Of a DNA stretch of 64,000 bases, positions 924 through 34,380 are shown one piece after another. Numbering within the stretch: the stretch's first letter is position 1; each line of letters begins with the position of its first letter. This stretch comes from Haliotis cracherodii (Eukaryota): the NCBI RefSeq assembly GCF_022045235.1, contig NW_027266343.1, positions 56,854,001-56,918,000 of the forward strand, written 5' to 3'. The translations under genes and the position numbers were made by a program. The notes below the pieces were generated by a model. It made no database searches. It saw nothing but the letters and a program-made list of their open reading frames with translations, and had not been told where the DNA came from.

Positions 924-3900
924 ATGACGAAAATACGAAAACAGAGCAGAAATAAGACTTACAACTATACCAAAGACCGGAAAAGAAGTTGGAAAAACAA
1001 AAACAAACTACAAAAAATAACATGGCAAGGCTGTTAGAAATGTTTATGCAGTATAATTTACTATAAGTCAGGGCCTCATCGCAGGAGAACTTTATTTAAC
1101 GTGCTGAAGTAGGTACATATAGACGTCGTTCAGGCTAACTGAAAGACGAGTAGTGCACAATTTCAGTTAGAGCCACGTCCTTTAACTCTAGGAGTAGCAC
1201 TTCCAAAGATGAATGGATGAGGGGATATACAGGAGTTTGAACAAATGCTAAAATATTACAAAAAAACCAACTAAACGATGAAAAGTTAAAGATTCTTTAC
1301 CTCGATAGACGTGTCATCCCGTGAAGATCCGATTTGGATTAGGCCATCAGCAACCCATGCTTGCTGTGAAAGGCGACTATTGTTGTCATAAAAGGCGACT
1401 AACGGGATTCGGTGGTCAGGCTTGCTGACTTTGATTGATGTATGTCATCGTGTCCCAGTTGCGTAGATCAATGCTCATGATGTCAATCACTGGATTAAAT
1501 TGTCTGGTCCACACTCGATTATTTTCAGACCGCCATCATATAGCTGGAATATTGCTGAGTGTGGCGTTAAACAACAAACAAACAATTAGTTTTTCTGGTC
1601 AAATACCTGAAATGGGTTGACGAGAAATCAGTGTGTTTTGGCTTTGACTTTTTGGGGGCTGGGATGTCAGTTTATTTTGTATAATGTTCAAACATTTTTC
1701 AGTGAGACTGTAAGTGAAGCTTGGGATGAGAAGAAGTCTGTAGCACAGAACATGCAGGACATGGGGCTGTCAGCGGACTCCAACCAAACCATAAGGATCC
1801 CCAAAACTAAGGTGTGCTATTTTGTTGCTATGTGAGTTTTGAACACATTCTTCCATATAACATGTGTTGTATACCATGTTTTGTCAAAGGATGACATCTG
1901 TGTCCCCAATACACATGTATTCCTAGATCTGCTGTATAAGGGTATTGGGTGGTCATGATGGCTAATACATACAAATATTATGTCATGGGGGTCGAATGGT
2001 TAAAGCTAAAACTGCACCTCAGCAAAACGCCATCGAGCTAAAACGGAACCCTGGCCAAAGCCAAATTTGTATTGTGATTGTACCACGTGTGTTCCACTGT
2101 CTGATGTTGTCATTGTGTTTGGTATTTCAGGAATTTCTGACAAAGTCTGCTGAAGTTGTCATGGCAATTAAATCCAAAAAGAAGAAAGCTGTCAAGCATC
2201 ATGTTGTTGATGGTAAATTTACTCATTAGTGACTCTGTTATGGTGGAAATGAGAGTAAAGTATGCAGCTAGACATGTGAATGACCCCTTAGAAATGTAAC
2301 TGTGTACATTATACATATAGTGTACATTTTTTTCTCCCCAAAATACATCTGTGTAGAGGGGTGATGCACATAATACACGCATTCAACAAATTTTAATGTT
2401 TTTCCCCAATGCATTAAATGCAAAGACATTACCATGAGCAAGTAACACAGGAAATACCATGTCAACAAATCCATACAGAAGTAGGCAATTTAATCCTGTT
2501 ATCACTCTATCTGGTTATAAAATGTGTTCATTATACATGTATATTCACACATATGTTTGTGATCTATTTCATTTATTTTTTCTAAAACTCAACATTGTTT
2601 ACATTAGTTTGGCAAAATCTGGTGTGTACTTATCAGCAGATCTCAGCAACTCACTGTTATTTACAGAACCATGATCAGATTACAGTAACTGACACCTTGA
2701 AACGAACCGTAGTCAACAGAAAATAGATACATATGTTGTAAATCTGGAAATTAATGAGTCTCCAATTTAATACGACTGCTGACCCCTAGCCAAAAATGCG
2801 ACTCAATATCAATGCGACCCAAACCCCATCCCATCTTCAGTGGAATGATACATATTCTTACCTTTATCCAATCAAAGTGTGTAGTGCACTTGCAATAAAC
2901 AATAAACAGTGTTTTCCTAAAAACATCACACAGTTTATATGTTTACCATGTTTACTCTGCTGACTGGCATGAAGGAAGATCAAAGTCAATGAAATAATTG
3001 AACCAAAACAGTTCACTGATTGGTACGTGGAGAAGGTGTCAACAAGGTTGACACGAGTGGGAAGAACTCTTGACACCAACAGGGCGGTCGGGTAGCCCAG
3101 TGGTTAAAGCGTTCAGTCGTCACGCCAAAGACCCGGGTTCGAATCACGACATGGGTACAATGTGTGAAGTCCATTTCTAGTGTCCCCCACCGTGATATTG
3201 CTGGAATATTGCTAAAAGCGGCGTAAAACCAAATTCACTCACTCACTCACTTGACACCAAAGGTGATCACTCAACTGATGCCCATTGTGTAATTTCTATT
3301 GTTTGAATGACATTGTTATATACTTGTTTCAACTGCTGCTCAATAAACTGTGTGTTTATATTCAAGTTGGTATTTCCACTATCCAAATTGTGCAGTTATA
3401 ATTTCAAGATTTACAGTACCATAAATGCCCTACTTTGACTCGTCAAAAATTATGGTTATTATAGTTTCACTATTATATATCAACATTATGTTGATACTGG
3501 ACTGGAATGGAAGCTGCTATTTGATGGGCTTATGTTGACTTCTTGTTAGTTATGTCATTGGTCGGTCAAAGTTCCTGAAAGGTTGTTCTGACGCGGCCTG
3601 TCAGGGAATGTCCTATGATCTTTGCGTAGCGGTAGTGAACACTAGGATTTGATGAGAGTGAGTAAAATCTGCACTTGAAATATCAAGATATTGAAATATA
3701 CTTTTCCTGGTAAAATAATAGTTTCAGATACAATTTCTTCCAATCATTAGATTGAAATTCTTTTATGTTATATTATTGGGTATTTTTTGTCTGAATCACA
3801 GGTAGATCTGGAGGAAAATATGTGTACAGCTGATTGCTATTTCTGGCTATTTCTCACAGTAACTTCTATCTCTGCATATAAAACAATGCTAGCAGATCAA

Positions 3901-6900
3901 GTGATATTTCATGCCCCAAAGTATATTTTTTTTACCAAGAACCCGTTTTGTTGCTATATTTTTTTACAGGTAGCCACTAGTAAAATCAACAAGTCAGGCC
4001 AATATTGTAGGTAGCCAAAAATGTTTAAAATTATCTTTTAGACGTAATTTAATCAAATTCCTATTATGATATGTACCCAGCATTAATCTTGAATAGTATA
4101 TTAGCCATGCATTCTTCGTTAGCCATTCTTTGTTTTTTTGTTTTTTTTTATTTATCTTTTTATTTACTTCCGAATGTCACCGACAATGACCGTTTTTCCA
4201 TGTCTATATTTGCTTCCAACTCCTCGAAATCATGTCAACTATCACTATTAATAGTTCCTAAGTTACTTTCATCATCGTTTTCACTCACAGCTTTTTGTGT
4301 TGCGATATTTGTCTGCTGTGCGGAGATGAAAAGTACTTTGCCATGATGTTGTCAAGTAAAATGGAATGGTGTTCACATGTCAGAAATTTGTAAACTCGAT
4401 GCATTGGTTTCAGTAAAATATGTATTTTGACTCATTGGGACTCATTGGGTGTTACAATAATCTTAGCGATAAGATCGCTTTGTGAAACGATGATTAGGTT
4501 ATCTGTGTGTCAAACAGTGTGGATCATTGCTTCTGCTGTGAACCACTTGTCTGGCTAGCCCTGAGGTGGTTATTAATAGGCCACTGTGGAATAATTGGAA
4601 AGTTGCAGACTGTGGCATAATAACATACACTAGTTCAAGAATGGTGATGGGTTTAATAAATTTAAAATATTGAAAAGACTGTTGTGTTCTGATAGATGTA
4701 TATTAATAAATAAATGATAGATTTGTGCATCTTATCCAGATACTCCCTGCTAAATTTTATATATTGAATGAAATGTTCTGTTTTGATTGATGTGTATTGA
4801 TAAATAAATTATAGATGTATCACATCTTATCCAGATGCTCCCTGTTTTAAAGAACTCAGTGAGAATTGCTCTTTTGAAGAAGCTGATATCTACCCATCTC
4901 CTGACATCTTCCCTCTCCTGACATCTTCCCTCTCCTGACATCTTCCCATCTCTTGACATCTTCCCATCTCCTGACATCTTCCTTCTCCTGACATCTTCTC
5001 ATCTCCTGACATCTACCCATCTCCTGACATCTTCTCATCTCCTGACATCTTCTCATATCCTGACATCTTCCCATCTCCTGACATCTTCTCATCTCCTGAC
5101 ATCTTTCCATCTCTAGACATCTTCCTTCTCCTGACATCTTCCCATCTCCTGACATCTACCCATCTCCTGACATCTTCTCATCTCCTGACATCTTCTCATA
5201 TCCTGACATCTTCTCATATCCTGACATCTTCCCATCTCCTGACATCTTCTCATCTCCTGACATCTTCTCATCTCCTGACATCTTTCCATCTCTAGACATC
5301 TTCCTTCTCCTGACATCTTCCCATCTCCTGACATCTTCTCATCTCCTGACATCTACCCATCTCCTAACATCTTCCTTCTCTTGATATCTTTGCTCTCCTG
5401 ACATCTTCCCATCTCCTTTCATCTTCCCATCTCCTGACATCTTCCCTCTCCTGACATCTTCCCTCTCCTGACATCTACCCATCTCATGACATCTTCCCAT
5501 CTCATGACATCTTCCCATCTCCTGACATCTACCCATCTCCTGACATCTTCCCTTTCTTGACATCTTTGCTTTCCTGACCTCTTCCCATCTCCAGACATCT
5601 TCCCATCTCCTGACATCTTCCCATCTCCTGACATCTTCCCTCTCCTGACATCTTCCCATCTCTTGACATCTTCCCTCTCTTGACATCTTCCCATCTCCTG
5701 TCATCTTCCCATCTCATGACATCTGCCCATCTCCTGACATCTTCCCATCTCCTGACATCTACCCATCTCCTAACATCTTCCCTCTCTTGACATTTTCCCT
5801 CTCCTGACATCTTCCCTCTCCTGACATCTTCCCATCTCCTGACATCTACCCATCTCCTGACATCTTCCCTCTCTTGACATCTTCAGTCTCCTGACATCTT
5901 CCCATCTCCTGACATCTACCCATCTCCCGACATCTTCCCTCTCTTGACATCTTCCCATCTCCTGACATCTTGACATCTTCCCATCTTCTGACATCTTCCC
6001 TCTCCTGACATCTTCCCATCTCATGACATCTTCCCTCTCTTGACATCTTCCCATCTCCTGACATCTTCCCATCTACTGACATCTTCCCATCTCCTGGCAT
6101 CTTCCCATCTCCTGACATCTTCCCTATCCTGACATCTTCCCATCTCCTGACATCTTCCATCTCCTGACATCTTCCCATCTCCTGACATCTACCCATCTCC
6201 TGACATCTACCCCACTCCTGACATCTTCCCTCTCCTGACATCTTCCCTCTCCTGACATCTTCCCATCTCTTGAATTCTTCCCTCTCTTGACATCTTCCCT
6301 CTCCTGACATCTTCCCATCTCCTGACATCTACCCATCTCCTGACATCTTCCCTCTCTTGACATCTTCCGTCTCCTGACATCTTCCCATCTCCTGACATCT
6401 ACCCATCTCTTGACATCTTCCTTCTCCTGACATCTTCCTTCTCCTGACATCTTCCCATCTCCTGACATCTTCCCATCTACTGACATCTTCCCTCTCCTGA
6501 CATCTTCCCTCTCCTGACATCTTCTCATCTCCTGACATCTTCCCGTCTCCTGACATCTTCCTTCTCCTGACATCTTCCCATCTCCTGACATCTTCCCATC
6601 TCCTGGCATCTTCCCTCTCTTAACATCTTCCCATCTCCTGACATCTTCCCATCTCCTGACATCTTGACATCTTCCCATCTTCTGACATCTTCCCTCTCCT
6701 GACATCTTCCCATCTCCTGACATCTTCCCTCTCTTCACTTCCCATCTCCTGACATCTTGACATCTTCCCTCTCCTGACATCTTCCCATCTCCTCACATCT
6801 TCCCTCTCCTGACATCTTCCCTCTCTTGACATCTTCCCTCTACTGACATCTTCCCATCTCCTGACATCTTCCCATCTCCTGACATCTTCCCATCTCCTGA

Positions 6901-9295
6901 CATCTTCCCTCTCCTGACATCTTTCCATCTCTAGACATCTTCGCATCTCCTGACATCTTCCCATCTCCAGACATCTTCCCATCTCCAGACATCTTCCCAT
7001 TTCTTGATATCTTCCCATCTCCTGACATCTTCCTTCTCCTGACATCTTCCCATCTCCTGACATCTTCCCTCTCCTGACATCTTCCCATCTCCTGACATCT
7101 TCCCATCTACTGACATCTTCCCATCTCCTGACATCTTGACATCTTCCCATCTCCTGACATCTTCCCATCTCTTGATATCTTCCCATCTCCTGACATCTTC
7201 CCTCTCCTGACATCTTCCCTCTCCTGACATCTTCCCATCTCCTGACATCTTCCCATCTCTTGACATCTTCCCATCTCCTGACATCTTTCCATCTACTGAC
7301 ATCTTCCCATCTCTTGACATCTTCCCATCTCTTGATATCTTCCCATCTCCTGACATCTTCCTTCTCCTGACATCTTCCAATCTACTGACATCTTCCCACT
7401 CCTGACATCTTCCCATCTCCTGACATCTTCCCATCTACTGACATCTTCCCTCTCCTGACATCTTCCCATCTACTGACATCCTCCCATCCCGACATCTTCC
7501 CATCTACTGACATCTTCCCATCTACTGACATCTTCCCATCTACTGACATCTTCCCTCTCCTGACATCTTCCAATCCACTGACATCTTCCCATCTCCTGAC
7601 ATCTTCCCATCTACTGACATCTTCCCATCTACTGACATCTTCCCATCTACTGACATCTTCCCATCTACTGACATCTTCCCATCTCCTGACATCTTCCCTC
7701 TCCTGACATCTTCCCATCTACTGACATCTTCCCTCTCCTGACATCTTCCCATCTACTGACATCTTCCCATCTACTGACATCTTCCCATCTACTGACATCT
7801 TCCCATCTCCTGACGTCTTCCCATCTCCTGACATCTTCCATCTACTGACATATTCCCATCTCCTGACATCTTCCCATCTTCTGACATCTTCCCATCTACT
7901 GACATCTTCCCATCTCTTGACATCTTCCTATCTCCTGACATCTTCCCATCTACTGACATCTTCCCTCTCCTGACATCTTCCCATCTACTGACATCTTCCC
8001 TCTCCTGACATCCTCTGGAAGCTCATTCTATAGAACAGTGCCAGCCTTGCTCAAGGTTCTGTTTCCATACATTATTCGGCTGGTCTTAGTACAGGTTGTT
8101 GTTTTTTTCAGCCCTTGAGAAGCAGGCCAAAATTCCCCAGGAGGCCAGACTAAGACTGTCAGACTTGGAGGTCAGATACTGTGCCCACATGATGGAGAAA
8201 CATGGCGAGGACTATAAGGTATGTGGGGATGTACCACTGTAAAAAGAAATCGTGTCTTGCCTGGACTAATGAGTCTATGCATTGTCAAATGAAAATTTCA
8301 TAACGAAATCCAACATCCGCTTCATCAACTGCCGTGAAGATTTCTGTCGATTGCAGAATTTGTAAAGTCATCTGGTCAACAGATATTTTCCAAACCCTTT
8401 CATGTTTCTAATCAAGGTGCTCGCATGATTTGATGCACTTCGAGAAGTAAGACCCAGCTTTTTGACAATATAGATCTTGATTATTGATCTGATCATCTTA
8501 TTTAAAACAAATGCTGGTGATATGTGAGGTGGAATCTGATTGGTCAATAGTAGGAACATTGAGGGACACAACTTGTAGTAGCCAGTGGTCGATTTGTTTG
8601 TTTGTTTGTTTATTTGTTGTTTAACGCCACATTCAGCAATGTTCCAGCTATATGACGGCATTCCTTAAATGATCAAGTTCGGACCAGACAATCCAATGAT
8701 TGACATCATGAGCATCGACTCACGCATTTGGGATATGATAACATGCATCAACCAAGTCAGCGAGCCTGACCCCCCGATCCCGTTATTCGCCTCTAAGGAT
8801 AAGCATAGCACTATAATCGAGCCCAGAAATTCCAGCCTAGTTTGGCAAGGGTAGAAACTGGACTTTTATAGTCCGTTAGCTCCCTTGCCTCTGGAAGATG
8901 CACTGTAAGATACCCGTAGATGAAAATGTTTAAAAAAATAAGGGCGTAATTAATAATCAATAGGAATTACAATATGATGAAGATCAGATCAAATACCAAA
9001 ATTAACCAATTGATAATAAATATAACCTACTTAATGACATCGTTTTCCAATCAAGGTGATAGTGGAACAAACATACAGTCTTATTAAGCAATGTTAATAT
9101 GTATTCATGGTATGATAATGCTGAAACATTTTCTTCACTTTTGTGCAGGCAATGGCACGGGACCCAAAGAACTATTACCAAGAGACACCTAAACAGATAA
9201 AAAAGAAAATCAACCGATTTAAGAACATTCCTGAGCAGTATGAGACCTACCTTCGCTCAAAAGGTGAGAGTGGATCAGCCATGGAAACAACATGA
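924..9295 (+). CDS. NOP16: Nucleolar protein 16 (5 coding exons, 181 aa)
   Basis: Exons 924-1024, 1703-1811, 2131-2212, 8112-8218, 9149-9295 join in phase (546 nt): MTKIRKQSRNKTYNYTKDRKRSWKNKNKLQKITCETVSEAWDEKKSVAQNMQDMGLSADSN...[36 protein letters not shown]...METT. AWD..SV.QN...MGL and [16 protein letters not shown].TPKQI are Nop16 signatures. Intron 1 needs a GC donor. Confidence 0.95.
1318..1585 (+). mobile_element. SINE-like family B copy (~270 bp, no tRNA head recognised)
   Basis: Matches the dispersed consensus CCCGTGAAGATCCGG..GTCGTAAGAGGCGACTAACGGGATCGGGTGGTCAGGCTCGCTGACTTGG..GGAATATTGCTGAGTGCGGCGTTAAAC(AAAC)n seen about 20 times in the window. Confidence 0.8.
3080..3249 (+). mobile_element. 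tRNA-derived SINE family A copy with 11-bp TSD
   Basis: A-box TAGCCCAGTGG, B-box GGTTCGAATC, (TCAC)n tail; flanked by CTTGACACCAA at 3069-3079 and 3250-3260. Confidence 0.9.
4885..8012. repeat. 17/18-bp minisatellite (CTCCTGACATCTTCCC[A]T)n, ~3.1 kb, in NOP16 intron 3
   Basis: Direct reading; roughly 175 units; accounts for all MSGDGK/RCQEMG/DVRRWE ORFs in the track. Confidence 0.97.
8592..8805 (-). mobile_element. SINE-like family B copy (partial)
   Basis: Reverse-complement match to the family B consensus with (TTTG)n tail. Confidence 0.75.
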
Positions 9296-13285: not shown

Positions 13286-16200
13286 TTAACCCCTCTGGAT
13301 GGGTTGTGCCAAGTCCTCGATTCGCCGAGGCACCACACCCTTCAGAGCCGATTCTCTCACTACAAATGCATCGGGATTGAATTGCACATGGTCCATTGAT
13401 GCTCGCACAATAGGTTGTGAGAGTTCATCCAATCGGCTTGAAGCTACTGCACGTTTCGCTGCTCGTGTTACGGGCCATTCCACCTCCTTGGCGGGCAGGA
13501 AGCCCTCGGTGGTGCCCTTGGCTCGGGCTAACTCCATGCTCCTGGTGCTGGCTGAGGAGTTCTTGGCAGCAGCACTCACCTGTAATAAAGTCAAGGAGAT
13601 GTTCAGAGTTTCAGATACCCATGAAGATCCGGGTTAGAATAGGTCTTCAGCAACCCATGCTTGCCGTAACCGTTGACTATGTCTGTCGTAAGAGGTGACT
13701 AATGGATCGGATGGTCAGTGCGAAAAAAATAATATGTAAATTGTTACAGAATTATTATTTTGATAATTTGTCCTGTTGTCCCCCAAAATAAATTGTTTGC
13801 TGAACATGATTGGATGTTCTGATAAAAAAGTGTTGTGAATAAAACCTTAGGGTAGGAGGTGAGGTGAGGTGAAATTGGGTTTAACATTGCGTCCAAGGTT
13901 ATTGCACTTATATAGTGACGTCCATGCACGTGTGTGTGTGTGTATGGCTGTTTGTAATAGTGCGGACTGATGCCTATTTATAGTGCTAGCTCACTGAGAT
14001 ACCATGCCGCAGTTAAACATGAATACCCCACTCGGACACAGTATATGGACCCCTTAATGCCGAGCGCCAGACAGGGTAACAACAAGTACAACCTTTTAAC
14101 GACTTTTGGTATGACTTGGCAGGGGATTGAACCCCGGACCTGCTCTCTTGGCGGACCCTCTACCACTAGACCACGGAGGCGGTAGATGAAGAGTAGGAGT
14201 ACAGAGTTGACGTACAGACATCAGCTTCTTTAATCGTTCAGTGCAAGTTTTCAGCACATGTCCTAATACATTTGTCAAGTAAATCATAATGGTACCAGGA
14301 CCCGTTTGGGAGTGAGTTGGGTTTAACGCCCTTTTTATTCAAGTTATATGTGGGAGGAAAGCCCAAAGTGATGCGGGTCTCACATATTTACCACATGGAT
14401 GAAACCCATGAGCATGGGTATGGTGCTGACAAATCTAGAAACATAATCTGGGCGAGCCAGGATTTGAACCCACAGTCATAGGTTTCTAGCGTGTCTAAGG
14501 GATGAAACTGCACAGCAAATTGTTTGCCAACTTCTAGAATGCCAATCAAACACTGTCATAATGCTGGAATACTTCTGAGCGCGGCATTAAACAATAAGAA
14601 TAATCTCTCCTGGGAAAGGGTGGAAATATCAGTTTTCCTATCCTCTCAATGACTCAACATGATATTGTTTGCTTCTTTGGACTACCTCAATGAGGTGTCG
14701 CCCCATGAAGATCTGGGTTGCAATTGACCTTAAGTAACCCAGCTCGTCATTGTATCCCAATTGCTTTGATAGATGATCATGATATCAATCACCGAATTGT
14801 CTGGTCCAGACTTGGTTATTGATAGTCTGCTTTCAAATAGATGGAATATTGCTGGGGGCAGTGTTAAACAACAAACAAAGATGGGTCAGACATATAGTTA
14901 TACATACAGTCCATTGTGGTTCTCTGAAGGGCCCTGAGTTCCTTTCCTTGGGTGTGGCGAGAGATTCGATTCTCTCGGATGGCCGAGCTTTGAGTGCAGG
15001 AGAAGGGATGACAGTCTGCACCTGTCTGCTGGACTGGAAGTCTTTGTGGTAGGGTTTGTGTTGTGCCAGTTGAGCTGTGCGGGCTCGGTCGCCACACCCA
15101 GCAGCTCCTTCATCCACGTCCCAGATTGGACTCGACCTGCCGCAGCTGTAGAAGAACTGTGGCCTGGCAAATAGAAATAGGTGTGAGATAACTGAGATAA
15201 ATGGGTGTGAGATAATCGAGATAAATGGGTTTGAGATAAATGAGTGTGAGATAAATGTCTGTGAGATAACTGACGTAAATGGGTGTGAGATAACTGACGT
15301 AAATGGGTGTGAGATAAAGGGGTGTGAGATAATCGAGATAAATGGGTGTGAGATAACCAAGATAAATGGGTGAGAGATAAAGGGGTGTGAGATAATCGAG
15401 ATAAATGGGTGTGAGATAACCAAGATAAATGGGCGTGAGATAAAGGGGTGTGAGATAATCAAGATAAATGGGTGTGAGACAACAAAGATAAATGGGTGTG
15501 AGATAACCGAGATCAGTGGGAGTGTGATAACCCAGATAAGTGGGTGTGAGATAAAGGGGTGTGAGATAAATGGGTTTGAGATAACCAAGATAAATGGGTG
15601 TGAGATAACCGAGATCAGTGGGTGTGTGATAACCAAGATAAGTGGGTGTGAGATAAAGGGGTGTGAGATAAATGGGTGTGAGATAACCAAGATAAATGGG
15701 TGTGAGATAATCGAGATCAATGGGTGTGAGATAAGCAGATTTTAGGTTTCTTTTCATGTCACAAGGAACTTCTAACTTATGTTGGGATAAGTTGTATTAC
15801 TAGAGGCATGATTACAGGGTTTGAGGCTACTCTTTGTTTGTAGTTTAACACCTCTCAGCAATATTTCAGCTATATGAGCATCGATCCACACAGTTGGGAT
15901 ACAATGAGCTGCATCAACCAAGACAGGGAGCTTGATCACCCAATCCCATGAGTCGCCTCTTACAACAAGCATACATTACCAAAGATCTATTCCAACCTGG
16001 ATGTTAAAGGGTCTTCAGGCTACTGCAATTACAACATGCCTGATAACTGGATATCTTATATTTTTGGGTATTTATTTTTTACTAAAAGCCTAGGCAAGTC
16101 TAGGTCAAACTAACCAAATCTAGTTTGCTGGTTCTTTCGAATAATTTGTTTTTTAAAGACATGTTTTCATTGACTATTTGTTGGTCTAAGTATGAGGCTA

Positions 16201-19200
16201 CTGTGATTACTAGATGTATGGTAACTTTTTGAGACTACTTGGATTGCTAGATGTATGATAGCTGGGTTTGAGGCTACTGGGATTGCTAGATGTATGATTG
16301 CTGATTTTGAGGCTACTGTGATAACTAGATGCATGATTGCTGATTTTGAGGTAACAGACATTACTAGATACATAATGATTGGGTTTGAGATTAAGTACAC
16401 ATTAATGGTTTTGAAATTACTAGGATAAATATATACTAAGGGACCAACTATTTGATATTCTGGGGGATTTTGTATCAAGATTAGATATTTTTTCAACCAC
16501 AGCTACAAAACCATATATTTTTTTTAATTTAAACCTATGAGACTTATTTCTTTTAAAAAGAAAAGCACAATGCAACAATATAATTTTTTTGGCAGGTAAA
16601 TTTCTATTCAACACTATGAAACATAATTATTCTTTTCAAGCATTTTCGAGGACAATATATTGTTTTAGATACAATCCCTATTGAAAATGATCCATTATTA
16701 TATCAATAGTTCACAATTATTAAGAAAGACATTGGTCTGAGTCAAAGACATAGAAAAAAACAGTGCAGGTTGCCATGACTACCTGTGTTCCATATATTCC
16801 TGATGTGTCCTTTTGGGTTTGGCCAGTTCCATGACTCTCTGCGATGCCGCTGACGCCATGGCTTTAGGGCTTACGTTCCATAGCACCGACGATCGCCCAC
16901 AGCTATAGTAAAACAGGGGGCTGAAAGAGAAAGAGGTTACTGTGCATTTTCAACTGTTTATATGCTCAAGTACAGGTATTATTCTTAGTTTTGAAAAGGA
17001 CGCTTCCGTGGTCTAGTTGATATAGCGTCTGCAAAATTTCATCTCGCCTTCACCCAACTTAAAACATGCTAAAGCACAAGTGATGACTGGTATTAATGAA
17101 ATGAAAACGAAGACAACATCACTTACTGGGAAGCCAAACGAGTGTCTTTGCAAATACGTCTTTGCAAAAGGGTTGTCATTTGAAAACATAATTCTTTTAA
17201 CACTAGAGGCACCAGGGTGCGTTTCCCCTTACACCCAAAGCGTTACATTCCACCTTAACAAAATATCATGAAAAGTTGTTAATTCAGTGAATTGTAAATG
17301 CCTGTGTTCGCCAGCCTCTCAAATAGTTAAAGATGACATCAATCCAACTACCGTCAAAAATATATCTTTCTGTTTCTGAATAATCAAAGACGTCCTCTTG
17401 ATACGTTATCAGTAACATCTTCAACACTTACTGCCCGTAGCTATCCGCTGTGTTCTCCTCCCAGCCCACAGAATCAGACTAACCTGGCCGCTACCTTGTT
17501 GCCAAGTGAAACAAACGCTACACTGACTCCCTAAACGTCCCGCCACCGGTGTGATAAAACGAGACCTTGCTAAGTCCGCAAACTGAAGCCTGATTTTGTC
17601 GGGGTGGGAGACCATAATTCTAGGCTCACATCAACCCGATCAACTATGGCATCGACCCCACCACGACACCCCGATCTCCCGTCGGTGTTGTTACAGATGC
17701 ATACACGTAACACTGATTACCTATTGAAGACGCTTGGCTCAGATCCATGATAACCCGTAAGTCCGTGAAGGACTTTTGTTGCAGGTGGGTAGACTGGGTA
17801 GATTGATACACGGCTATCATCGAGGTGTATTAGTAACAGTTGTTGTAACACGAGTCGTGTATTAAGAAGCTTACCTTGCACAGACCATTGCTTCCTTTCA
17901 CACATTACACGAGTGTTCTTAAGGGGACTGTCGATGACACGGTGTCTGTTTCTGATAAGGACTTACGGGCATTTGGTTCACAGACTACTGAAGCGTGGAA
18001 GACACGATCTATGATCACGTATCCGATGCCTGTTGCACTTAAGGACATTTCATACGGTAGCCCGGAGTACGTAGGATTTATTATAGGCACGGAATCAATT
18101 TGTGAGTGGAGATTAGGAGAAAACCGAATGCACTAGAGCGTTCATGTACCCAATCCAAACGCTTGCTGAACTATCCTGATTTAGTTCTACAGATTTAATT
18201 TGAGTTAGATTCGATATCTATAGACTAGATGACACCAGATCGTATTATTGAACAGGATGTTTCCTTGCATGTCGCTGTAAGCTGCGTGGTATGTTAAGAA
18301 ACATCGTCAATTCTTCATGGGTTTGTAAATTCACTACGTTCCTATATTAAAGCAAGTAGAGTATTGAAACCCTTGAAGTATTGACGACGAATCAGCAGCA
18401 GACCAGGGCCCCGTTCCACAAAGCGATGGCAGCGCTCCAACTGTCGCAAGTCTATGTTGGAGTATGGGAGTTACGACTGACATAGTGCTACGATAGCTTT
18501 GTGGAACGGGGCCAAGGTCTAAAGCTGCTGTTGACCAATAGTTTGGTGAGTAGTGAAAACCCAATCCTGACCTCTACCTTCATGCACATTGTCGTAAGAG
18601 CCGACGAACGGGATCATATGGTCAGGCTAGCTGACTTGGTTGATGCATGTCATCGTATCCCAATTGCATGGATCGATGCTCATGTTGTCAATCATGTTGT
18701 CTGGGCCAGATTATTTACAGACCGCCGTCATACAGCTGGATTATTGCTGAATGCGGCGTTAAACAACAAACCTGACTGCACACACGTGTGTTATTACTTG
18801 GTTCCATGACGCCGAAAGGAAGGACAATTCGTGCAAGAAACACGTTAAGAGAAATTGGTGATGGGACTTGTTCAAGACCAAGATGGTCCGTTAGTTCTGT
18901 GTAGCGGTACCTATAGGTGGTTAGTCACGCTGAACATGCCCATTGATGAGACCCGTAAAGATTCCGGGGTAGAATAGGTCTTCAGCAACTCATGCTTGCC
19001 GTAAAAGGCGACTATGCTTGTCGTTAAAGGCGACTAACGGTATCGGGTGGTCAGGCTCGCTGACTTGGTTGATACATGTCATCGATCCCAATTGCGTGGA
19101 TCGATGCTCATGATATTAATCACAGGATTGTCTGGTCCAGACTCGATTTTTTACAGACCGCCGTCATATAGATGGAATATTGCTGAGTGCGGCGTAAGAC

Positions 19201-28372: not shown

Positions 28373-29525
28373 ATACCGTAAATCATGAAATTAATGCATC
28401 TCCTAATTAATGCCAGTGTCGACCCTTGGTCTGTGTGTCATGAAATTAATGCAGGTAGCATTACCCTTGAACTTGAAAAAACTTATCAGCAAATGATTAC
28501 CCGAAGACAATAGGCTTAGAATTCCATGACTTAGTATTGGGTGATAGCGGTTCAATTGAATAATATCAACACAAACCTAACTACAACTGCTTGACATGTG
28601 ATCTAACTTTAATGACATCAAAAGCAGGAAATTCCATGTAAGGCCTATTCAGATGAGATAGGTCAGGTCGACAACGGAGATTTACAGGTTCCAAGTGTTG
28701 ATGCACTTGTTATTGCAATCATCTGAACGTAATGAGCAGTGTTATGTTGATTGGTTGGTTGATTTGTTGTTTAACGCCGCACTTAGCAATATTCCAGCTA
28801 TATGACGGCGGTCTGTAAATAATCGAGTCTGGACCAGACAATCCAGTGATTAATATCATGAGCATCGATCCACGCAATTAAGATCGATGACATGCATCAA
28901 CCAAGTCAGCGGGCCTGACCACCCGATCCCGTTAGTCGCCTTTTACGACAAGCATGGGTTGCTGAAGACCTATTCTAACCCGGACCTTCACGGGTCAGCA
29001 GTGTTATGTATTCACCACGACTGCTGTCACTGCACTGTTTCACACCGCTTTCAGCAATATTCCAGCAATATCACGGCGGGGGACACCAGAAATGGGCTTC
29101 ACACATTGTACCCATGTCGGGAATCGGACGTGGGTCTTCAGCGTGACGAGCGAACGCTTTAACCACCAGGGTACCCGACTGCGAGACAATAGGAAGAATA
29201 TAACACATTCAGCAGCTGACGACTAACGGCATCGGGTGGTCAGGCTCGCTGACTTGGTTGATGCATGTCATCGATCCCAATTGTGTGGATCGATGCTCAT
29301 GATGTCAATCACTGTATTGTCTGGTCCAGACTTGATTATATTCAAACCGCTGTCATATAGCAGGAATATTGTTGAGTGCGGCGTTAAAAACCAAACAAAC
29401 AAAAACCTCCCCAATATCACACTAACCACGTTGTATTTTCTACCTACAGGTGTGAAAGGTAAACGTGTATTCAGAGATTTAGATTGTTCAAGGTTTCAAT
29501 GGATTCGTTCATGTTTCTGCATCTT
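28373..29525. repeat. Right arm of inverted segmental duplication (partner 20980-21856)
   Basis: Reverse-complement match; carries one extra SINE B insertion. Confidence 0.92.
28747..28996 (-). mobile_element. SINE-like family B copy with 12-bp TSD, absent from the paralogous arm
   Basis: AGCAGTGTTATG at 28735-28746 and 28997-29008; single target site at ~21496-21507 in the other arm. Confidence 0.92.
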
Positions 29526-29888
29526 GAAACAACAAACCAACAAACGTGGTGATATTGTTAGATATGGACAGTAGGGCAAATGATGAAACATGGTAGTTTT
29601 GCTTTATAATTCCCAACAAGCCCTCGCTTTTTCATAGCTCACTTAATGAAATGGAGACATATGTAATCTTTGAGTCTTAGGAAATATATGGAGACATTTT
29701 CAGGCGAAAAAGGCTCAAGGTATTCGCTTTTCGGCCATATGAAAAACGAACTGTTATTATCATTTTAACAGTGATAAATATTTGCATCCAATCTTACTTT
29801 TCGTGCCTTGTGAAACCCCGGTTGACATCTCTACATGATACCATTACACGCGCGTGCAGCCCGGGCATGGAGGTTCTTCTGATTATGA

Positions 29889-30093
29889 TGACGTCATAGA
29901 AATGACGTCACTCTTTGTTGTGTGCTCTGTTAACATACTCGCGGTATTCGCATTTACAAATGAAATCTTTATTATGAAATATTGGGATGAGCAGTACTGA
30001 TGTTATTCGTAAACATAATAAGACTCATTTCTTATGGCTAAGTACATTTAGATATATGTGATACATTCCTGACGCCATAGATATATGACGTCA
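29889..30093 (+). promoter_or_regulatory. CRE (TGACGTCA) cluster upstream of the basic-protein gene
   Basis: Perfect palindromes at 29889-29896, 29903-29910, 30086-30093; near match TGACGCCA at 30070-30077. Confidence 0.65.
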
Positions 30094-30295
30094 CAATCGC
30101 TCCTCCAGCACAAGCCGGCGTCATTTTATCTTGGACAGTTCGGCGACGTTATCAACTGTTACAGACACATTGCTTGCTGCTGTTGTTGTTCAAGGTAAAT
30201 GTTGATCAAACAGTAGGTCCTGATCGTGTTCTCTGTCTTCTTCCACAGTGTATCTGTCCCCGCTCCCTGGCACCGGCGTCGTGGCTGAAGTGAGG

Positions 30296-33200
30296 ATGGT
30301 CGCCGGGCGCCGCATCACACGGGGCTATGAGGCTGGGAGGAGGAACGGACACTACAACACCACCCCTCCCCACACCGACAGCAACAACAGCACTGGGTCG
30401 ATGGGTGTGTGGTTTGTAGATGATGTTTGTGGTTCCTGGTCCAATAACGGTTATCTCTTTCCGTGACCTGATATTTTCATGAGCTGAGCAGACACGAGAG
30501 AAATTGATTACTTCACAAGAAAAGACAATTTGTTTGTTAATTGTGTACTTTATTGTTGATTTGTCTCCTGTGTCTAGTGTTATTAAGGAAGACTAAAAAT
30601 AGTTCAACTTTTTCTCTCAGATTAAGACAGTATTTCATCACTCAATACATTATAATGTCTCATGTAGCATATTCCCGTATCAATCATATCACCGTGCTAT
30701 TGTGTCATTTCAAGCCGTGGAGTAGAGTGGATTGAAACGGATCGGGTGGACAGGTTCGAGCTACAGATTAGCAGCGTATTTGCGTAACCCCCCCCCCCCC
30801 CCCCCCCAATATATTAAAAACTCAATAAGTTCAATTAACTTGCCAGAAACGCATGCATTAAATGAAAAACTAAAATGTATAAATAAAAGCACGCGTAAAT
30901 ACCCAATGAACCTTCTTTAGCTTGCTTCGCTCGTCACGCCAGAGACCCGGGTTCGATTCCCGACATGGGTACAATGTGTGAAGCCCATTTCTGGTGTCCC
31001 CCGCCGTGATATTGCTGGAATATTGCTAAAAGCGGCGTAAAACCATACTCACTCACTTACTCTTCAGCTTGCGTACACATTTAGGAGGTAATTTTCGAAA
31101 CCAATTACGAGTTATTTAAATCAGGCCTTTATATTAAGAACAGTTATAATGTACATCTAAAACATTATTTCATTATTTTTTAAATCTTAAAATTACCCAA
31201 TTAAAATAGAAACACTAGAGTGAAAACTCAATTGCTCAAAAAGTTATCTGGGGCTCTGGACCCTCTGCTGATGGCGTGTAATGGCGATGTAATGGTGCGT
31301 TGCTCACGACTTCGCTCATTGGTTTGCATAGGTACAGGATGTCGTGATATTGCTGAAATATTGCAGACTGCGACTTAAAATTAAATTCTCTCACTCATTC
31401 ATTATCCTGTCATCTCGATGTCTTTTAACTGATTTTCGCTAAGACCTGCCTGGGAAATACCTCTCGTGGCAAATGAGTGAGTATGGTTTTACGCCGCTTT
31501 TAGAAATATTTCACGGCAGGGGGACGAGCGGACGCTTTAACCGCAAGGCTACCCCACCGCCCCATATGGCAAATGAAAATCCACTTCCAATGTACACTGA
31601 CCAATGTGTTGGCTCTGGTAGTAAGATACAATATATGTTAAGCACGGTGTAAAAACAATCATTACTTATTGTTACTTTTCAATCATCTTTTGTGTCAATG
31701 TGTGAAAATTGTACCTGTATTGTACAGGTAAACAAAAGCAGATACCATACACCGGTAAAATTGTTGCAACACGATACATCGAGAAACGTATAGGTCTCCA
31801 TAGACAAACATTTAGTCTCTGAAATCTTATATTACACAAGATCCTTCTTGACTCTAAAAAAAAAAAAAATCCCTATGCTAATTTGAGCTGGCTAGACTTG
31901 CTTTTGTATGCATTTCTAGATTATGTTTTTTTCATAAAATAACTATATTCCACGGTCATGGTGCAGGACTAAGGTCTCCATTGTATGGTATGAAAATGGA
32001 TATTTATGTTATGTATGCAGTCTACAGTCTGCAGTTTTTCATACAACATATAATTACTGACACCGACTGATGTACAATGACAAAACCATTTTTTTCAACA
32101 GAGAGGGTCATGTCACGTGTAAAACGGAAACTGAACTTCGGCAGGAAGCCGCCCAAGGAAAGGGACGTAACTCCTACCACCTCAAATACAAGCAGGGCCA
32201 GTAAAAAGGTGGGCAATTCGTTTGAATTAGTTCAGTTAAACAAGCACAATCCAGGTATAAAGAAATATCCCTGTTTCAACATTCTAAGCTGAAGACCTCG
32301 ATCATTTGTATGTGTGATTAAAGTGTACATCCATACATTTCCGATTATTACTCAGAGAGATTCATGAGAAATGGCCTTTCGAGTTGGTCAAGAATGGACC
32401 ACTCGCCCCTTTCCGTAACCTGCAAGAAATCTCCATTCGGCTTGTCCCGGAGTGACACGAGTTTGTCACGAGTGGATATAGCACATTCGTCACCACTCGC
32501 CCCTTTCCGTAACCTGCAGGAAATGGCCATTAGGCTTGTCCATTCGTTACCACTCGCCCCTTTCCGTAACCCGCAAGAAGATCGCTATTCGGGTTGTCCC
32601 GGAATAACATGAATTGGTCTCTAATGTAGGCTTGTCGTGGAATAACACGAATGGTCATGGTTGAATAGAGCATGGTCAACTGATATGAATAAAAATATGT
32701 TCTCTGATAAGCAACATGTCAGACAGGTTTGTTTTATTCGTGAGAATCAATCCGGATTGTTGAAGACGGAATTACCAGTCGTAATGAATTACCTGTACAG
32801 CTGTAAACTTTATGGTAATTATTTATTTATTGTGTCAGCACTGAGTATATTGTTTGATTGTGTTTATATTTCAGATCGCTGGTTACTGACAGTTTCCACT
32901 ATACACCTGTTAAGTTTTAGTAACATTTGCGCTTACCTGCTATGGGCATTGGGTCCACCACCACAAAAGCAGTTGTTAGCGTGTTCTTAAAATATATAAA
33001 AATACCTTCGAAACATAAATGGAAATTTTAATTTGTAATATATTATATACGAGTGCTCTGATTTTTTTCAAATATATTTAGCTTCAGGTCTGCCGAAATT
33101 GGATAGGGTAGTGGTTTAAATATTTGCTCATCACTCCAAAGGCCCGTAATGGAGTACTCCCTTTGTACAATGGATGAAGCCCATTGCTGGCGTCGGATGC

Positions 33201-33687
33201 CTGGATATTGCTGTTTAAAAGTGCAATAAAACTAATCTTACGCAGGCTGTCAGTCGCTGTGCCTGAAAGTCAATATTAACTGCCCATCATTCGAATGCCA
33301 TTGCCCAAAGTTCAGTATAGCCTAATGAATTTAGAATTTTTCGAAAGGATAGTCTTTCGTTATAAATTTACGAGGCGTTATCAATGATTGATTTATCGTT
33401 ACCAATAGAAATCAAAGACCGGCTCAAGGGTTCGGAATGTGAAAAAGTCAGTTCGAAGAAACCGAAACACAGTCTCTCGTGAACTGCGCAATCTCCTGAA
33501 CTCTGCTGCGACTGTTATACTTCCTGTGCGCCTCCGTTCTGATATGCGCCGCTTGGACAGAACCGGAAGTACTAGTGGGGGAAGAATGGGGTCAGGTAGA
33601 GCAGGGTACCCCCTCAAGTCATCACCGGAAGTGACACACTTACCCAAGAGACGCAGCACACACAAGACGTTTCGCCGATCCAAGTAG
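30296..33687 (+). CDS. Unrecognised small Arg/Lys/Ser-rich basic protein, 3 coding exons, 164 aa
   Basis: Exons 30296-30404, 32102-32208, 33409-33687 join in phase (1, then 0): MVAGRRITRGYEAGRRNGHYNTTPPHTDSNNSTGSM-ERVMSRVKRKLNFGRKPPKERDVTPTTSNTSRASKK-KSKTGSRVRNVKKSVRRNRNTVSRELRNLLNS...KRRSTHKTFRRSK. Likely 5'UTR intron 30195-30248 (CAAG|GTAAAT...TTCCACAG). No family recognised. Confidence 0.62.
30925..31062 (+). mobile_element. SINE family A copy (5'-truncated)
   Basis: B-box GGTTCGATTCC, body and (TCAC)n tail match the consensus. Confidence 0.8.
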
Positions 33688-34189
33688 GTTGTAACCGGTA
33701 ACACTATTGTGAGATAAGGCGACTCTTTTATGTCTAATACCACTGTTTTCATCTGTTTTTTCTCTTCGTCATGTGTGTCACATGTGTGTCGAAGAATTGT
33801 TACAAAAGCTGTACTCAAATACTTTAGTTAGACACTTGTGTAAATAACCTGCAGATTTGTAATGTACGTTGCATAACTGTATTTACCTCCCTTGTTTTCC
33901 AGCTGTCACAGCTGTGGTTGTTTCTTGCAATGGCCGCCCTTGGTCACGTCGTTAGTTGTTTGAGATGTTGTATATATCGTGCATCCATTCTGTTTGCTTG
34001 TTACTTGTTATCTTCGTTTTCTTAGCAGTTGAAAATATAGTGCTTCTATTTTGTTGATCTTGTCCATACTGTCATGATTATGATACACAAGCGTATTTGT
34101 GACCAGTCCTTGATAACATAATTACTGACATATAATATACTGGGGGATATTTTTGTGACATTGTGGGCTCAGTCTTCACTACAAACAAT

Positions 34190-34380
34190 TAAAAGATGGT
34201 ACTTGTTGTTCCCCTGTCTGGCGCTCGGCATTAAGGGGCTAAAACAAGGGCTGGTCGGCTCGGAGACCATGTACTGTGTCTGAGTGGGGTATTGATGTTA
34301 AACTGCAGCATGGTATCTCAGTGGGCTAGCACTATAAATCGGCATCAGTCCGGACTAGGACAAGTGCAAGCGCGCGCGCA

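What the first reader, a model, noticed from the sequence alone, without database searches (positions are those of the whole stretch)
29880..33690. Unrecognised basic-protein gene under a CRE cluster, divergent from THEG-like: candidate spermatid gene pair
Seen: three phase-compatible exons give a 164-aa, Cys-free, very Arg/Lys/Ser/Thr-rich protein with TP/SP sites and a VKRKLNF motif; three perfect TGACGTCA sites lie within ~400 bp upstream of the ATG; the THEG-like first exon starts ~2.4 kb away on the other strand. Known: CREM-tau acts through CREs at mammalian protamine and transition-protein promoters; molluscs use R/K/S-rich sperm nuclear basic proteins; KRxLxF is a cyclin-docking motif. 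Inference: a lineage-specific sperm chromatin protein (or a cell-cycle-regulated nuclear protein) co-regulated with a sperm axoneme gene. The ORF track fragments it, so it is easy to miss.
Basis: partly seen in the sequence, partly recalled or inferred. Interest (0 to 1): 0.75.

Follow-up and report, generated by a model that had tools for sequence, protein, structure and literature searches.

The report
NOP16's alternative basic tail exons
The three exons are real and transcribed, but rather than an unnoticed abalone sperm protein they encode an old, mollusc-wide basic tail that gene models splice onto the ribosome-assembly protein NOP16 and that may also be made alone from its own promoter.

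Summary
The three exons, the 164-codon frame, the composition, VKRKLNF and three perfect TGACGTCA sites are all there. These are the only three such sites in 64 kb and they lie within 205 bp. An RNA contig joins exon 1 to exon 2 directly.

The interpretation largely fails:
- **Not unrecognised.** RefSeq models of four Haliotis species attach these exons in frame to NOP16. They use a donor (9262|9263) nine codons before NOP16's stop and jump 21 kb over the antisense THEG gene to the acceptor at 30249.
- **Not lineage-specific.** Chiton, oyster, scallop, mussel, clam, limpet and snail proteins carry the same tail. All 20 tail-bearing sequences have RNGH and V[KR]R[KR]LxFGRxPPxxR. Most are fused to NOP16.
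- **Not protamine-like.** R+K is 26%, and nothing here bears on sperm.

Signs that it also works as its own gene:
- A Met 14-16 residues before RNGH is kept in 12 of 17 fused models and starts all 3 stand-alone models.
- Contig geometry in one run fits a local first exon ending at 30194.

Best reading: an ancient conjoined NOP16-tail locus encoding a disordered nuclear docking peptide. Its function is inferred only.

The parts
924..9262 (+). NOP16 coding exons used by the long isoform. Exact protein matches at 924-1022, 1704-1811, 2131-2211, 8111-8218 and 9149-9262; split codons add 1-2 bases at the edges.
   Evidence: Exact mapping of RefSeq protein P0001 (XP_071089975.1) on the window. Pfam Nop16 PF09420, E 1.4e-22.
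9257..9270 (+). Alternative 5' splice site inside NOP16's last coding exon (AAAAG|GTGAGA, cut 9262|9263), nine codons before NOP16's own stop.
   Evidence: Sequence. P0001 residue 171/172 junction maps 9262 -> 30249. Same junction position (...Y[LI]xSK|) in oyster, scallop, clam and unionid models.
9263..9295 (+). Canonical NOP16 end (GESGSAMETT, stop TGA 9293-9295), read when the internal donor is not used. AATAAA at 10379 and 10599.
   Evidence: No protein with this ending was retrieved, so the canonical abalone isoform is inferred from the sequence and from 168-195-aa NOP16 of other species.
13298..16880 (-). THEG-repeat exons of the antisense gene that lies inside the 21-kb NOP16->30249 intron.
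   Evidence: PF14912 hits over cut-off at window 13298-13579, 14947-15123 and 16773-16880.
29889..30093 (.). Cluster of three perfect palindromic CREs (29889, 29903, 30086), plus half-sites at 30070 and 30119.
   Evidence: 8 half-site hits in 29850-30160 against 2.08 per kb in the window. Single copy.
30073..30194 (+). Probable local non-coding first exon. The 5' end is uncertain, about 30073-30104. Donor TTCAAG|GTAAAT at 30194.
   Evidence: Inferred. In X4 a contig of depth 19.1 covering 30149 ends 46 letters away (30194 and/or 30104). The unspliced contig 30165-30276 starts 30 letters before 30195 and ends 29 letters after 30247, the geometry of an intron-sized bubble. No coverage here in X1 or X2.
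30195..30248 (+). 54-nt intron of the local transcript, retained in contig 22 of X4.
30249..30404 (+). 156-nt exon. 30249-30295 is the linker when fused (VYLSPLPGTGVVAEVR) or the 5'UTR when alone. ATG at 30296. Holds motif 1 (RITRGYEAGRRNGHY). Skipped in frame in one H. rufescens model.
32102..32208 (+). Exon with the invariant motif 2 (VKRKLNFGRKPPKER).
   Evidence: (junction 30403/32101 in X1 contig 1).
32875..34247 (+). Alternative long last exon (acceptor TTTCAG|ATC at 32874/32875). Reads IAGY then TGA at 32887-32889. Gives the 263-aa NOP16 isoform, or a 76-aa product if started at the local ATG.
   Evidence: X1 contig 6 is contiguous over 32873-34138; X2 contigs 9 and 10 and X4 contig 25 also fit. 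RefSeq isoforms P0004 and P0005 end ...SKKIAGY / ...IGGY. Frame checked.
33409..33687 (+). Last coding exon of the long form (92 aa, motifs 3 and 4, stop TAG 33685-33687). 3'UTR runs to about 34210 (ATTAAA at 34188).

Best explanation
The three exons are the downstream unit of an ancient, mollusc-wide conjoined locus, NOP16 plus tail.

**Route 1, fused to NOP16.** Transcripts started at the NOP16 promoter can use a 5' splice site nine codons before NOP16's stop (window 9262|9263). They skip 21 kb that holds the whole THEG gene on the other strand and land on the acceptor at 30249. This gives NOP16 with an in-frame tail of one of three forms:
- a 180-aa basic tail (351 aa in all);
- a short tail, through the alternative acceptor at 32875 (263 aa);
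- an exon-skipped tail.

**Route 2, alone (inferred).** The same exons are probably also transcribed from their own CRE-rich promoter, with a first exon ending at 30194. Translation from the conserved ATG at 30296 would give the free 164-aa tail.

**What the tail is.** It is intrinsically disordered and basic, and it carries four conserved short motifs:
1. TRxYxAxRRNGH[YF]
2. V[KR]R[KR]LxFGRxPPxxR
3. RELxxLL...PVRLRS
4. GYxLxSSxExT[HN]L

**How it most likely works (inferred, not shown).** It is a nuclear or nucleolar targeting and docking peptide. Motif 2 would be a basic-hydrophobic docking site of the RVxF (PP1) or RxL (cyclin) type, overlapping an NLS. Fused, the tail would bring a partner to NOP16 and pre-60S particles. 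Free, it would bind or titrate the same partner, possibly under cAMP/CREB-type control.
For: **The exons and the fused models.**
- The exon-3 peptide, searched against 1.84 billion representatives, gave one real hit. P0001 (351 aa) is 100% identical over residues 260-351.
- P0001 is XP_071089975.1 of H. cracherodii. It maps exactly on the window as NOP16 exons plus 30249-30403, 32102-32208 and 33409-33684.
- RefSeq isoforms of the same build exist in H. rufescens, H. rubra and H. asinina. Lengths are 351-361, 305-309, 285 and 263 aa.
- The 263-aa form matches the alternative acceptor seen in RNA contigs.

**RNA.**
- X1 contig 1 shows the 30403/32101 junction. It carries 28 further 5' letters that lie nowhere in 29600-30246, and X1 and X2 have depth 0 over 30080-30239. 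This fits an upstream exon outside the laid stretch.

**Spread beyond abalone.**
- In one search, 11 of 62 NOP16 hits are 243 aa or longer. All 11 are molluscs.
- Their extensions align with the abalone tail.
- In one search, RNGH and motif 2 are present in 20 of 20 tail-bearing sequences, 23-33 residues apart.
- A profile of the tail found 17 proteins. The 15 that carry names are all molluscs.
- Two unnamed ones (P0076, 324 aa, longest contig 3020 nt; P0079, 334 aa, contig 1476 nt) are fused ORFs on contigs too short to hold an intron-bearing gene. They are therefore transcript-level evidence of the fusion.

**Own start.**
- A Met lies 15-16 residues before RNGH in 12 of 17 fused models. It is the first residue of 3 of 3 stand-alone models, at -14 to -16.
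- In X4 the contig break points sit exactly at 30194 and 30247.
- The CRE cluster is tight and single copy.

**Disorder.** In AlphaFold2 with 24 sequences the tail has pLDDT below 50, except helices 196-203 (motif 1) and 280-295 (motif 3). There is no Pfam, PDB or Atlas match.
Against: **Limits on the fusion evidence.**
- RefSeq models of related species can be propagated from one another, so the four abalone models are not four independent observations.
- I see only in-frame fusions. Out-of-frame read-through would not appear as a long protein, so the frame conservation is partly ascertainment.

**Limits on the own-promoter evidence.**
- No stand-alone 164-174-aa abalone model is in the clusters looked up.
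- The stand-alone models in scallop, mussel and limpet come from other pipelines and may be ab initio calls.
- The local first exon is inferred from contig geometry in one run of a relative. That run also has low coverage of intron (30533-30728, depth 2.5) and of 29760-29919 (depth 10.2), so unspliced RNA or DNA is present in it.

**Weak constraint.** Exon 3 is weakly constrained between close relatives: 4 non-synonymous changes plus loss of the stop against 1 synonymous.

**Function.** No binding partner, localisation or expression pattern was tested. The motif readings rest on recalled consensus patterns.
Confidence: 0.65

Rival explanations
1. An independent small gene only. The tail is a separate, old mollusc gene with its own CRE promoter and ATG. 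The NOP16 fusions are rare read-through by-products that annotation pipelines have promoted to 'isoform X1', with no function of their own.
For: - Conserved start Met at -14 to -16.
- Stand-alone models in three species.
- CRE cluster and a good donor at 30194.
- X4 contig geometry.
- Read-through fusions that skip the downstream gene's first exon are common and often functionless (PMC6862657, passages seen).
Against: - In-frame, stop-free fusion models occur in 11 mollusc genera of three classes, with the junction at the same NOP16 position.
- The 156-nt exon can be skipped in frame.
- Some conservation ([ST]-[TP]-P ... [DE]-M) lies upstream of the Met in bivalves, chiton and abalone.
- In X1 and X2, runs of the window's own species, the local first exon has no coverage while the coding exons do.
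- Fused ORFs stand on short Logan contigs.
Confidence: 0.2
2. Alternative 3' exons of NOP16 only. There is no separate gene. The CRE cluster is an intronic enhancer or an unrelated element, and the conserved Met is just a residue of the tail.
For: - All RefSeq models in four abalones and most other molluscs are fused.
- No stand-alone abalone model was found.
- X1 and X2 show no local first exon.
Against: - A Met at a fixed distance in an otherwise variable linker, in 12 of 17 fused models, is hard to explain without use as a start.
- X4 contigs break exactly at a consensus donor (30194) and at the acceptor.
- All three perfect CREs of the window sit 210-407 bp before that ATG.
Confidence: 0.12
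3. One reading: a lineage-specific sperm nuclear basic protein (or transition-protein analogue), driven by CREM-type factors and co-regulated with THEG in spermatids.
For: - Basic, Cys-free and S/T-rich.
- CRE cluster.
- THEG is a head-to-head neighbour.
- Fast change of exon 3 and loss of the stop in relatives.
Against: - Conserved motifs across three mollusc classes.
- R+K is only 26%, with no Arg tracts and no H1 or protamine family match.
- Spliced to a ribosome-biogenesis gene in most models.
- THEG's start lies about 2.1 kb away across repeat DNA.
- There is no expression evidence either way.
Confidence: 0.03

Closest known systems
Conjoined / read-through genes (cis-splicing of adjacent genes), e.g. 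human PPAN-P2RY11 as described in PMC6862657 (passages seen). PMC2953495 was seen only as a search listing and the start of its abstract.
   Same: - Two units on one strand.
- The chimera starts at the upstream promoter.
- The last 5' splice site of the upstream gene is joined to the acceptor of the downstream unit's second exon, so the downstream first exon is left out.
- The product is an in-frame fusion protein.
- PPAN, like NOP16, is a nucleolar ribosome-biogenesis factor (recalled).
   Different: - The donor lies inside NOP16's last coding exon, nine codons before the stop, rather than at the end of a penultimate exon.
- The jump crosses a complete antisense gene (THEG).
- The arrangement is modelled in three mollusc classes, far older than most human conjoined genes.
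- The downstream unit has no known family.
NOP16 (Pfam PF09420, 'Ribosome biogenesis protein Nop16')
   Same: The first 171 residues of the long isoform are an ordinary NOP16: 57% identical to Gigantopelta and 43-53% to echinoderm, brachiopod and arthropod NOP16.
   Different: In one search the non-mollusc NOP16 proteins are 147-230 aa and stop where the abalone tail begins. The tail itself has no NOP16 similarity.
Sperm nuclear basic proteins and transition proteins of animals (properties recalled, not from a call)
   Same: Small, basic, Ser/Thr-rich and Cys-free.
   Different: Much lower R+K (26%), no Arg tracts and no H1 fold. The motifs are conserved across classes, where a sperm protein would be expected to turn over fast. 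It is fused to NOP16, and no sperm evidence exists.
Short docking motifs: PP1 RVxF ([RK]x0-1[VIL]{P}[FW]) and cyclin RxL/Cy (e.g. KRRLFG of p107, RRLIF of p21). Patterns and examples are recalled.
   Same: Motif 2 reads [KR]R[KR]L[NHQR]FG in all 20 tail sequences. That fits both patterns, and it sits in a disordered basic stretch.
   Different: Leu stands at the Val/Ile position of RVxF. The flank after the motif is basic (GRKPPKER) and not acidic. The invariant FGRxPPxxR goes beyond either motif. No binding was tested.

Membership tests
Sperm nuclear basic proteins (protamine, protamine-like, H1-type) | Very high Arg/Lys content with Arg or Lys tracts (threshold recalled: roughly a third to over a half of residues) | tested here: not met
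   R+K is 43 of 163 residues (26%). The longest basic runs are 3-4 residues.
Sperm nuclear basic proteins (protamine, protamine-like, H1-type) | H1 winged-helix domain or a protamine family match | tested here: not met
   0 Pfam families for each of the three exon peptides at E up to 10. Only Nop16 passed its cut-off on the whole P0001.
Sperm nuclear basic proteins (protamine, protamine-like, H1-type) | Spermatid- or testis-restricted expression and presence in sperm chromatin | not testable with these tools
   Runs are coded, with no tissue given, and contig depths cannot rank expression.
NOP16 (PF09420) | Match to the Nop16 profile over the curated cut-off | tested here: met
   Met for the fused database isoform P0001: 81.3 bits against a cut-off of 25. 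The 164-codon part alone has no such match. It is an appendage of NOP16, not a NOP16 domain.
Conjoined (read-through) gene | Two adjacent units on the same strand joined by splicing into one transcript | tested here: inconclusive
   Same strand and order are shown. The join exists in RefSeq models of 4 abalones and about 10 other molluscs, and in two Logan-derived ORFs. The abalone junction 9262->30249 was not seen in reads; only an unplaced 28-nt contig end fits it.
Conjoined (read-through) gene | Each unit is also expressed on its own, with its own promoter and end | tested here: inconclusive
   NOP16 has its own stop at 9293-9295 and AATAAA at 10379 and 10599. For the downstream unit there is the conserved Met, the CRE cluster and the X4 contig break points at 30194 and 30247. 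No TSS data are available.
CREB/CREM-responsive promoter | Full palindromic CRE(s) TGACGTCA close to the start site | tested here: met
   Three sites at 29889, 29903 and 30086, all within 205 bp (P 3.8e-5), next to the inferred first exon.
CREB/CREM-responsive promoter | Factor binding and cAMP or spermatid-specific response | not testable with these tools
   Needs a reporter assay, ChIP or expression data.
PP1 RVxF / cyclin RxL docking motif | Sequence pattern, conserved, in a disordered region | tested here: met
   V[KR]R[KR]LxFGRxPPxxR is present in 20 of 20 tail sequences. pLDDT is about 50 around it. The patterns themselves are recalled.
PP1 RVxF / cyclin RxL docking motif | Binding to PP1 or cyclin | not testable with these tools
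   No solved complex or homologue: the best PDB profile hit has E 1.6 and is an unrelated ribosomal protein.
PKA inhibitor (PKI)-type pseudosubstrate (my own lead; consensus recalled) | Conserved Arg-Arg before the pseudosubstrate residue | tested here: not met
   The first Arg of RRNGH is Leu or Val in the chiton and the two pulmonate sequences.
THEG (neighbouring gene) | THEG repeats, PF14912, over cut-off | tested here: met
   4 hits on the window's minus strand, 33.8-60.9 bits against a cut-off of 27.

The most novel reading that the evidence does not exclude
This would be a two-in-one locus more than 500 million years old and confined to molluscs. The ribosome-assembly factor NOP16 is alternatively spliced to a conserved regulatory tail, and the same tail is also made alone from a cAMP/CREB-responsive promoter. 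Free and NOP16-bound tail would then compete for one partner (PP1 or a cyclin-CDK), coupling cAMP signalling or the cell cycle to 60S biogenesis. The antisense THEG gene inside the joining intron would block the fused form when it is transcribed in testis, switching that tissue to the free form.
Probability: 0.1. Interest if true: 0.7.

Novelty: new variant of a known kind. Interest (0 to 1): 0.5.

Why it matters
- **Corrects the lead.** What looked like an orphan sperm gene is part of an annotated but undescribed NOP16 isoform set.
- **Defines a family.** The tail is a conserved, unnamed protein module with four motifs and no Pfam family. It is shared by chitons, bivalves and gastropods and absent from the non-mollusc NOP16 proteins seen here.
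- **Why it is unusual.** Deeply conserved in-frame conjoined genes are rare. This one also keeps an internal start codon, has its own CRE-rich promoter, and has a whole antisense gene in the joining intron. That makes it a tractable case for asking whether read-through fusions are functional.
- **Publication status.** I found no paper on it: NOP16 with 'mollusc' or 'Crassostrea' returned one unrelated paper.

Tried and rejected
**Tried, without result.**
- Pfam on the three exon peptides: 0 families.
- Pfam on seven long proteins: only Nop16 passed its cut-off.
- PDB profile search: one chance hit, E 1.6.
- ESM Atlas on P0001 188-351: no usable hit.
- Own-genome search for paralogues of exon 3: only chance hits at E 7.8 and 9.5.
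- The AlphaFold2 model was too disordered in the tail to justify a fold search, so none was run.

**Considered and rejected.**
- A PKI-like pseudosubstrate in RRNGH. The first Arg is not conserved.
- A retrocopy as the source of the spliced contig. The exon is single copy.
- A repeat or transposon origin of the CRE cluster. It is single copy.

**Weak or wasted calls.**
- One search was badly designed. With min_terms 2 it returned abalone papers without NOP16.
- Searches found none of the phrases I asked for.
- (sperm nuclear basic protein + Haliotis) gave one unrelated clam paper.

**Could not be done.**
- Tissue bias, because runs are coded.
- Conservation of the CRE cluster and of the THEG nesting in other molluscs, because no mollusc genomes are reachable.
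- Supplementary files were not consulted.

Full report
**1. What is in the sequence**

- 30296-30404: MVAGRRITRGYEAGRRNGHY...
- 32102-32208: ...RVMSRVKRKLNFGRKPPKERD...
- 33409-33687: 92 aa and TAG

The lengths (109+107+279 nt) give 164 codons plus a stop. All introns are GT-AG with good polypyrimidine tracts. Counted exon by exon, the product has R 29, K 14, S 20, T 17 and D+E 8, with no Cys or Trp among 163 residues.

TGACGTCA occurs three times in the 64-kb window (29889, 29903, 30086), all within 205 bp. Three sites per window is unremarkable, since 13 of 100 shuffles reach it. Their clustering is not: P = 3.8e-5. The promoter-like stretch and exon 3 are both single copy in the 1.18-Gb genome.

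**2. Transcription**

I laid four coded runs on 29600-34370. All are contigs, so depth cannot rank expression.

- Contig 1 of X1 (311 nt, no mismatches) lies on 30247-30403 and continues directly on 32101-32206. That is the exon 1/exon 2 junction.
- X2 contig 11 and X4 contig 26 begin their match at 33407, as expected for the 33409 acceptor, because exon 2 also ends in AG.

- **A second acceptor.** X1 contig 6 (1546 nt), X2 contigs 9 and 10 and X4 contig 25 run unbroken from about 32873 through exon 3. An acceptor TTTCAG|ATC at 32874/32875 explains this. After exon 2 it reads IAGY and a stop.
- **No local first exon in X1 or X2.** These two runs match the window without differences in exons 1-2. 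Their bin 30080-30239 has depth 0, yet contig 1 carries 28 more letters 5' of 30247 that lie nowhere in the laid stretch.
- **A local first exon in X4.** X4 is a close relative, with 18 differences in 637 nt of contig 26.
  - One contig covering 30149 ends 46 letters away.
  - An unspliced contig spans exactly 30165-30276.
  - The next contig starts at 30247.
  - These break points are what a 54-nt intron (30195-30248), spliced in some molecules and retained in others, would produce in an assembly graph.
  - This is my inference from the geometry. The spliced path itself is not among the rows shown.

**3. The exons belong to database models of NOP16**

The exon-3 peptide, scored against 1.84 billion representative proteins, found one true relative. 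P0001 is 351 aa and 100% identical over its last 92 residues.

P0001 is XP_071089975.1, 'uncharacterized protein isoform X1' of Haliotis cracherodii.

- NOP16 exons at 924-1022, 1704-1811, 2131-2211, 8111-8218 and 9149-9262. Pfam Nop16, E 1.4e-22.
- Then 30249-30403, 32102-32208 and 33409-33684.

The joining donor is AAAAG|GTGAGA at 9262|9263, nine codons before NOP16's own stop at 9293-9295.

Sister isoforms exist in the other abalones:
- 263 aa, ending ...SKKIAGY, which matches the alternative acceptor seen in RNA.
- 309 aa, which skips the 156-nt exon in frame.
- 285 and 305 aa.
- 357-361 aa. In H. rufescens, H. rubra and H. asinina the stop is replaced and ten residues are added.

That stop-to-Glu change is also seen in X4 and X23.

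No stand-alone abalone model of 164-174 aa is in these clusters.

The THEG repeats (PF14912) lie on the minus strand at 13298-16880. THEG therefore sits inside the 21-kb intron of the long NOP16 isoform.

**4. The tail is old**

A search with the NOP16 part returned 62 proteins. Eleven are 243 aa or longer, and all eleven are molluscs:
- three Haliotis clusters
- Crassostrea virginica
- two Saccostrea
- Ylistrum
- Argopecten
- the chiton Liolophura
- Bradybaena
- Biomphalaria

The non-mollusc NOP16 proteins are 147-230 aa.

The extra parts align with the abalone tail. A profile of them found 17 proteins, and the 15 that carry names are all molluscs:
- Fused models in Mytilus trossulus, Mercenaria and Potamilus.
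- Stand-alone models in Mizuhopecten (204 aa), Mytilus coruscus (162 aa) and Patella (179 aa).
- Two unnamed Logan-derived fused ORFs on contigs of 3020 and 1476 nt. These can only be cDNA-like.

In all 20 tail-bearing sequences RNGH is followed, 23-33 residues later, by V[KR]R[KR]LxFGRxPPxxR. A third motif (RELxxLL...PVRLRS) and a fourth (GYxLxSSxExT[HN]L) are shared by abalone, scallops, mussels and partly by limpet and oysters.

The fusion junction sits at the same NOP16 position (...Y[LI]xSK|) in abalone, oysters, scallops, Mercenaria and Potamilus.

**5. One gene or two**

For an independent start:
- A Met lies 15-16 residues before RNGH in 12 of 17 fused models. Elsewhere it is at -9, -10 and -20 in three models and absent in two.
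- That Met is the first residue of all three stand-alone models.
- The linker before it varies from 16 to about 90 residues.
- The abalone ATG has A at -3 and G at +4.
- Add the CRE cluster and the X4 geometry.

For a functional fusion:
- In-frame, stop-free models occur in 11 genera of three classes.
- The 156-nt exon is skippable in frame.
- A weakly conserved [ST]-[TP]-P ... [DE]-M lies upstream of the Met.

Caveats:
- RefSeq models can be propagated between relatives.
- Only in-frame fusions can be seen this way.

I conclude that both forms probably exist. That is the definition of a conjoined gene. The splice pattern, with the upstream gene's last donor joined to the downstream unit's second exon, is the usual one for read-through fusions (PMC6862657, passages seen).

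**6. What the tail does**

Nothing known matches it.

AlphaFold2 with 24 sequences gives a mean pLDDT of 60.6. The NOP16 part is helical. The tail is below 50, apart from two short helices at motif 1 (196-203) and motif 3 (280-295).

Between the window and X4/X23 the tail has 5 non-synonymous changes plus the stop loss against 3 synonymous. Both changes in exon 2 are synonymous. Constraint therefore sits in the motifs, not along the whole length.

A disordered basic peptide with invariant short motifs is most simply a targeting and docking module. Motif 2 fits an NLS and, by recalled consensus, both the PP1 RVxF and the cyclin RxL patterns.

I therefore propose, as inference, that the tail tethers a partner to NOP16 and pre-60S particles when fused, and binds or titrates it when free. 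I rejected my own PKI-pseudosubstrate idea because the first Arg of RRNGH is not conserved.

**7.

- R+K is 26%, with no Arg tracts and no H1 or protamine match.
- The motifs are conserved across classes.
- The product is attached to a ribosome-biogenesis protein.
- THEG's start lies about 2.1 kb away, across SINE-like and inverted-repeat DNA.

None of this favours a sperm chromatin protein sharing a promoter with THEG. Gonad bias remains untested.

**8. Novelty**

The exons are annotated but unnamed ('uncharacterized protein isoform X1'). I found no paper on a NOP16 extension in molluscs (one search was uninformative). The kind of system, a conjoined gene, is known. This variant is new to me in four respects:
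- it is old and in frame;
- it keeps an internal start;
- it has a CRE promoter of its own;
- an antisense gene lies in the joining intron.

The tail is an undescribed protein family.

Noticed in passing
window 33684-33687: The stop codon of the long form is not fixed. TAG reads GAG in X4 and X23 and in the RefSeq proteins of three other abalones, adding ten residues. One contig of X2 has a change at 33684, Lys to Asn. X2 also carries, at about half depth, three amino-acid changes (33461, 33463, 33476) that are fixed in the relatives.
   Followed up: partly
window 20781-21547 (-) and 28887-29574 (+): ORF translations on opposite strands are near-copies (e.g. ...YFLPTGVK.KRVF.DLDCSR.QWIRSCFCI...). 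This is an inverted duplication flanking the THEG 5' region, as another note of this scan (s1-841763) says. It ends about 350 bp before the CRE cluster.
   Followed up: no
window 30926-31062, 31480-31560, 33100-33230 and 34200-34370: Copies of a very abundant tRNA-like short interspersed repeat lie in both introns and after the 3'UTR. Summed depths reach 10^5-10^7 in all four runs, with hundreds of loose ends at 30926 and 31057.
   Followed up: no
window 32395-32600: Three direct copies of a unit of about 60-70 nt (...cactcgcccctttccgtaacctgcaagaaa...) lie in intron 2. The runs show high depth there, so it is part of a dispersed repeat.
   Followed up: no
window 24290-24920: A minisatellite inside the THEG gene gives long ORFs on both strands (repeated ...HDVPHE...). 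It has the densest TGACG/CGTCA half-site count of the window, 11 in 310 bp, so half-site density alone does not mark promoters here.
   Followed up: no
window 37900-40462 (-): ORFs look like the integrase, protease and gag parts of an LTR-type retrotransposon. This is judged by eye from the translations and was not tested. It sits about 3.7 kb downstream of the tail's last exon.
   Followed up: no
window 41963-42299: Tandem repeat of about 27 nt, giving repetitive ORFs in three frames (e.g. RNKVTIRTY repeated).
   Followed up: no
window 1023-1030: The first NOP16 intron appears to start with GC (TG|GCAAGG), a GC-AG intron, judging from the exact mapping of P0001.
   Followed up: no
window 27925-27965 (-): Near the presumed THEG start there is a CRE-like site with one mismatch (TTACGTCA), overlapping an E-box (CACGTG).
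   Followed up: no
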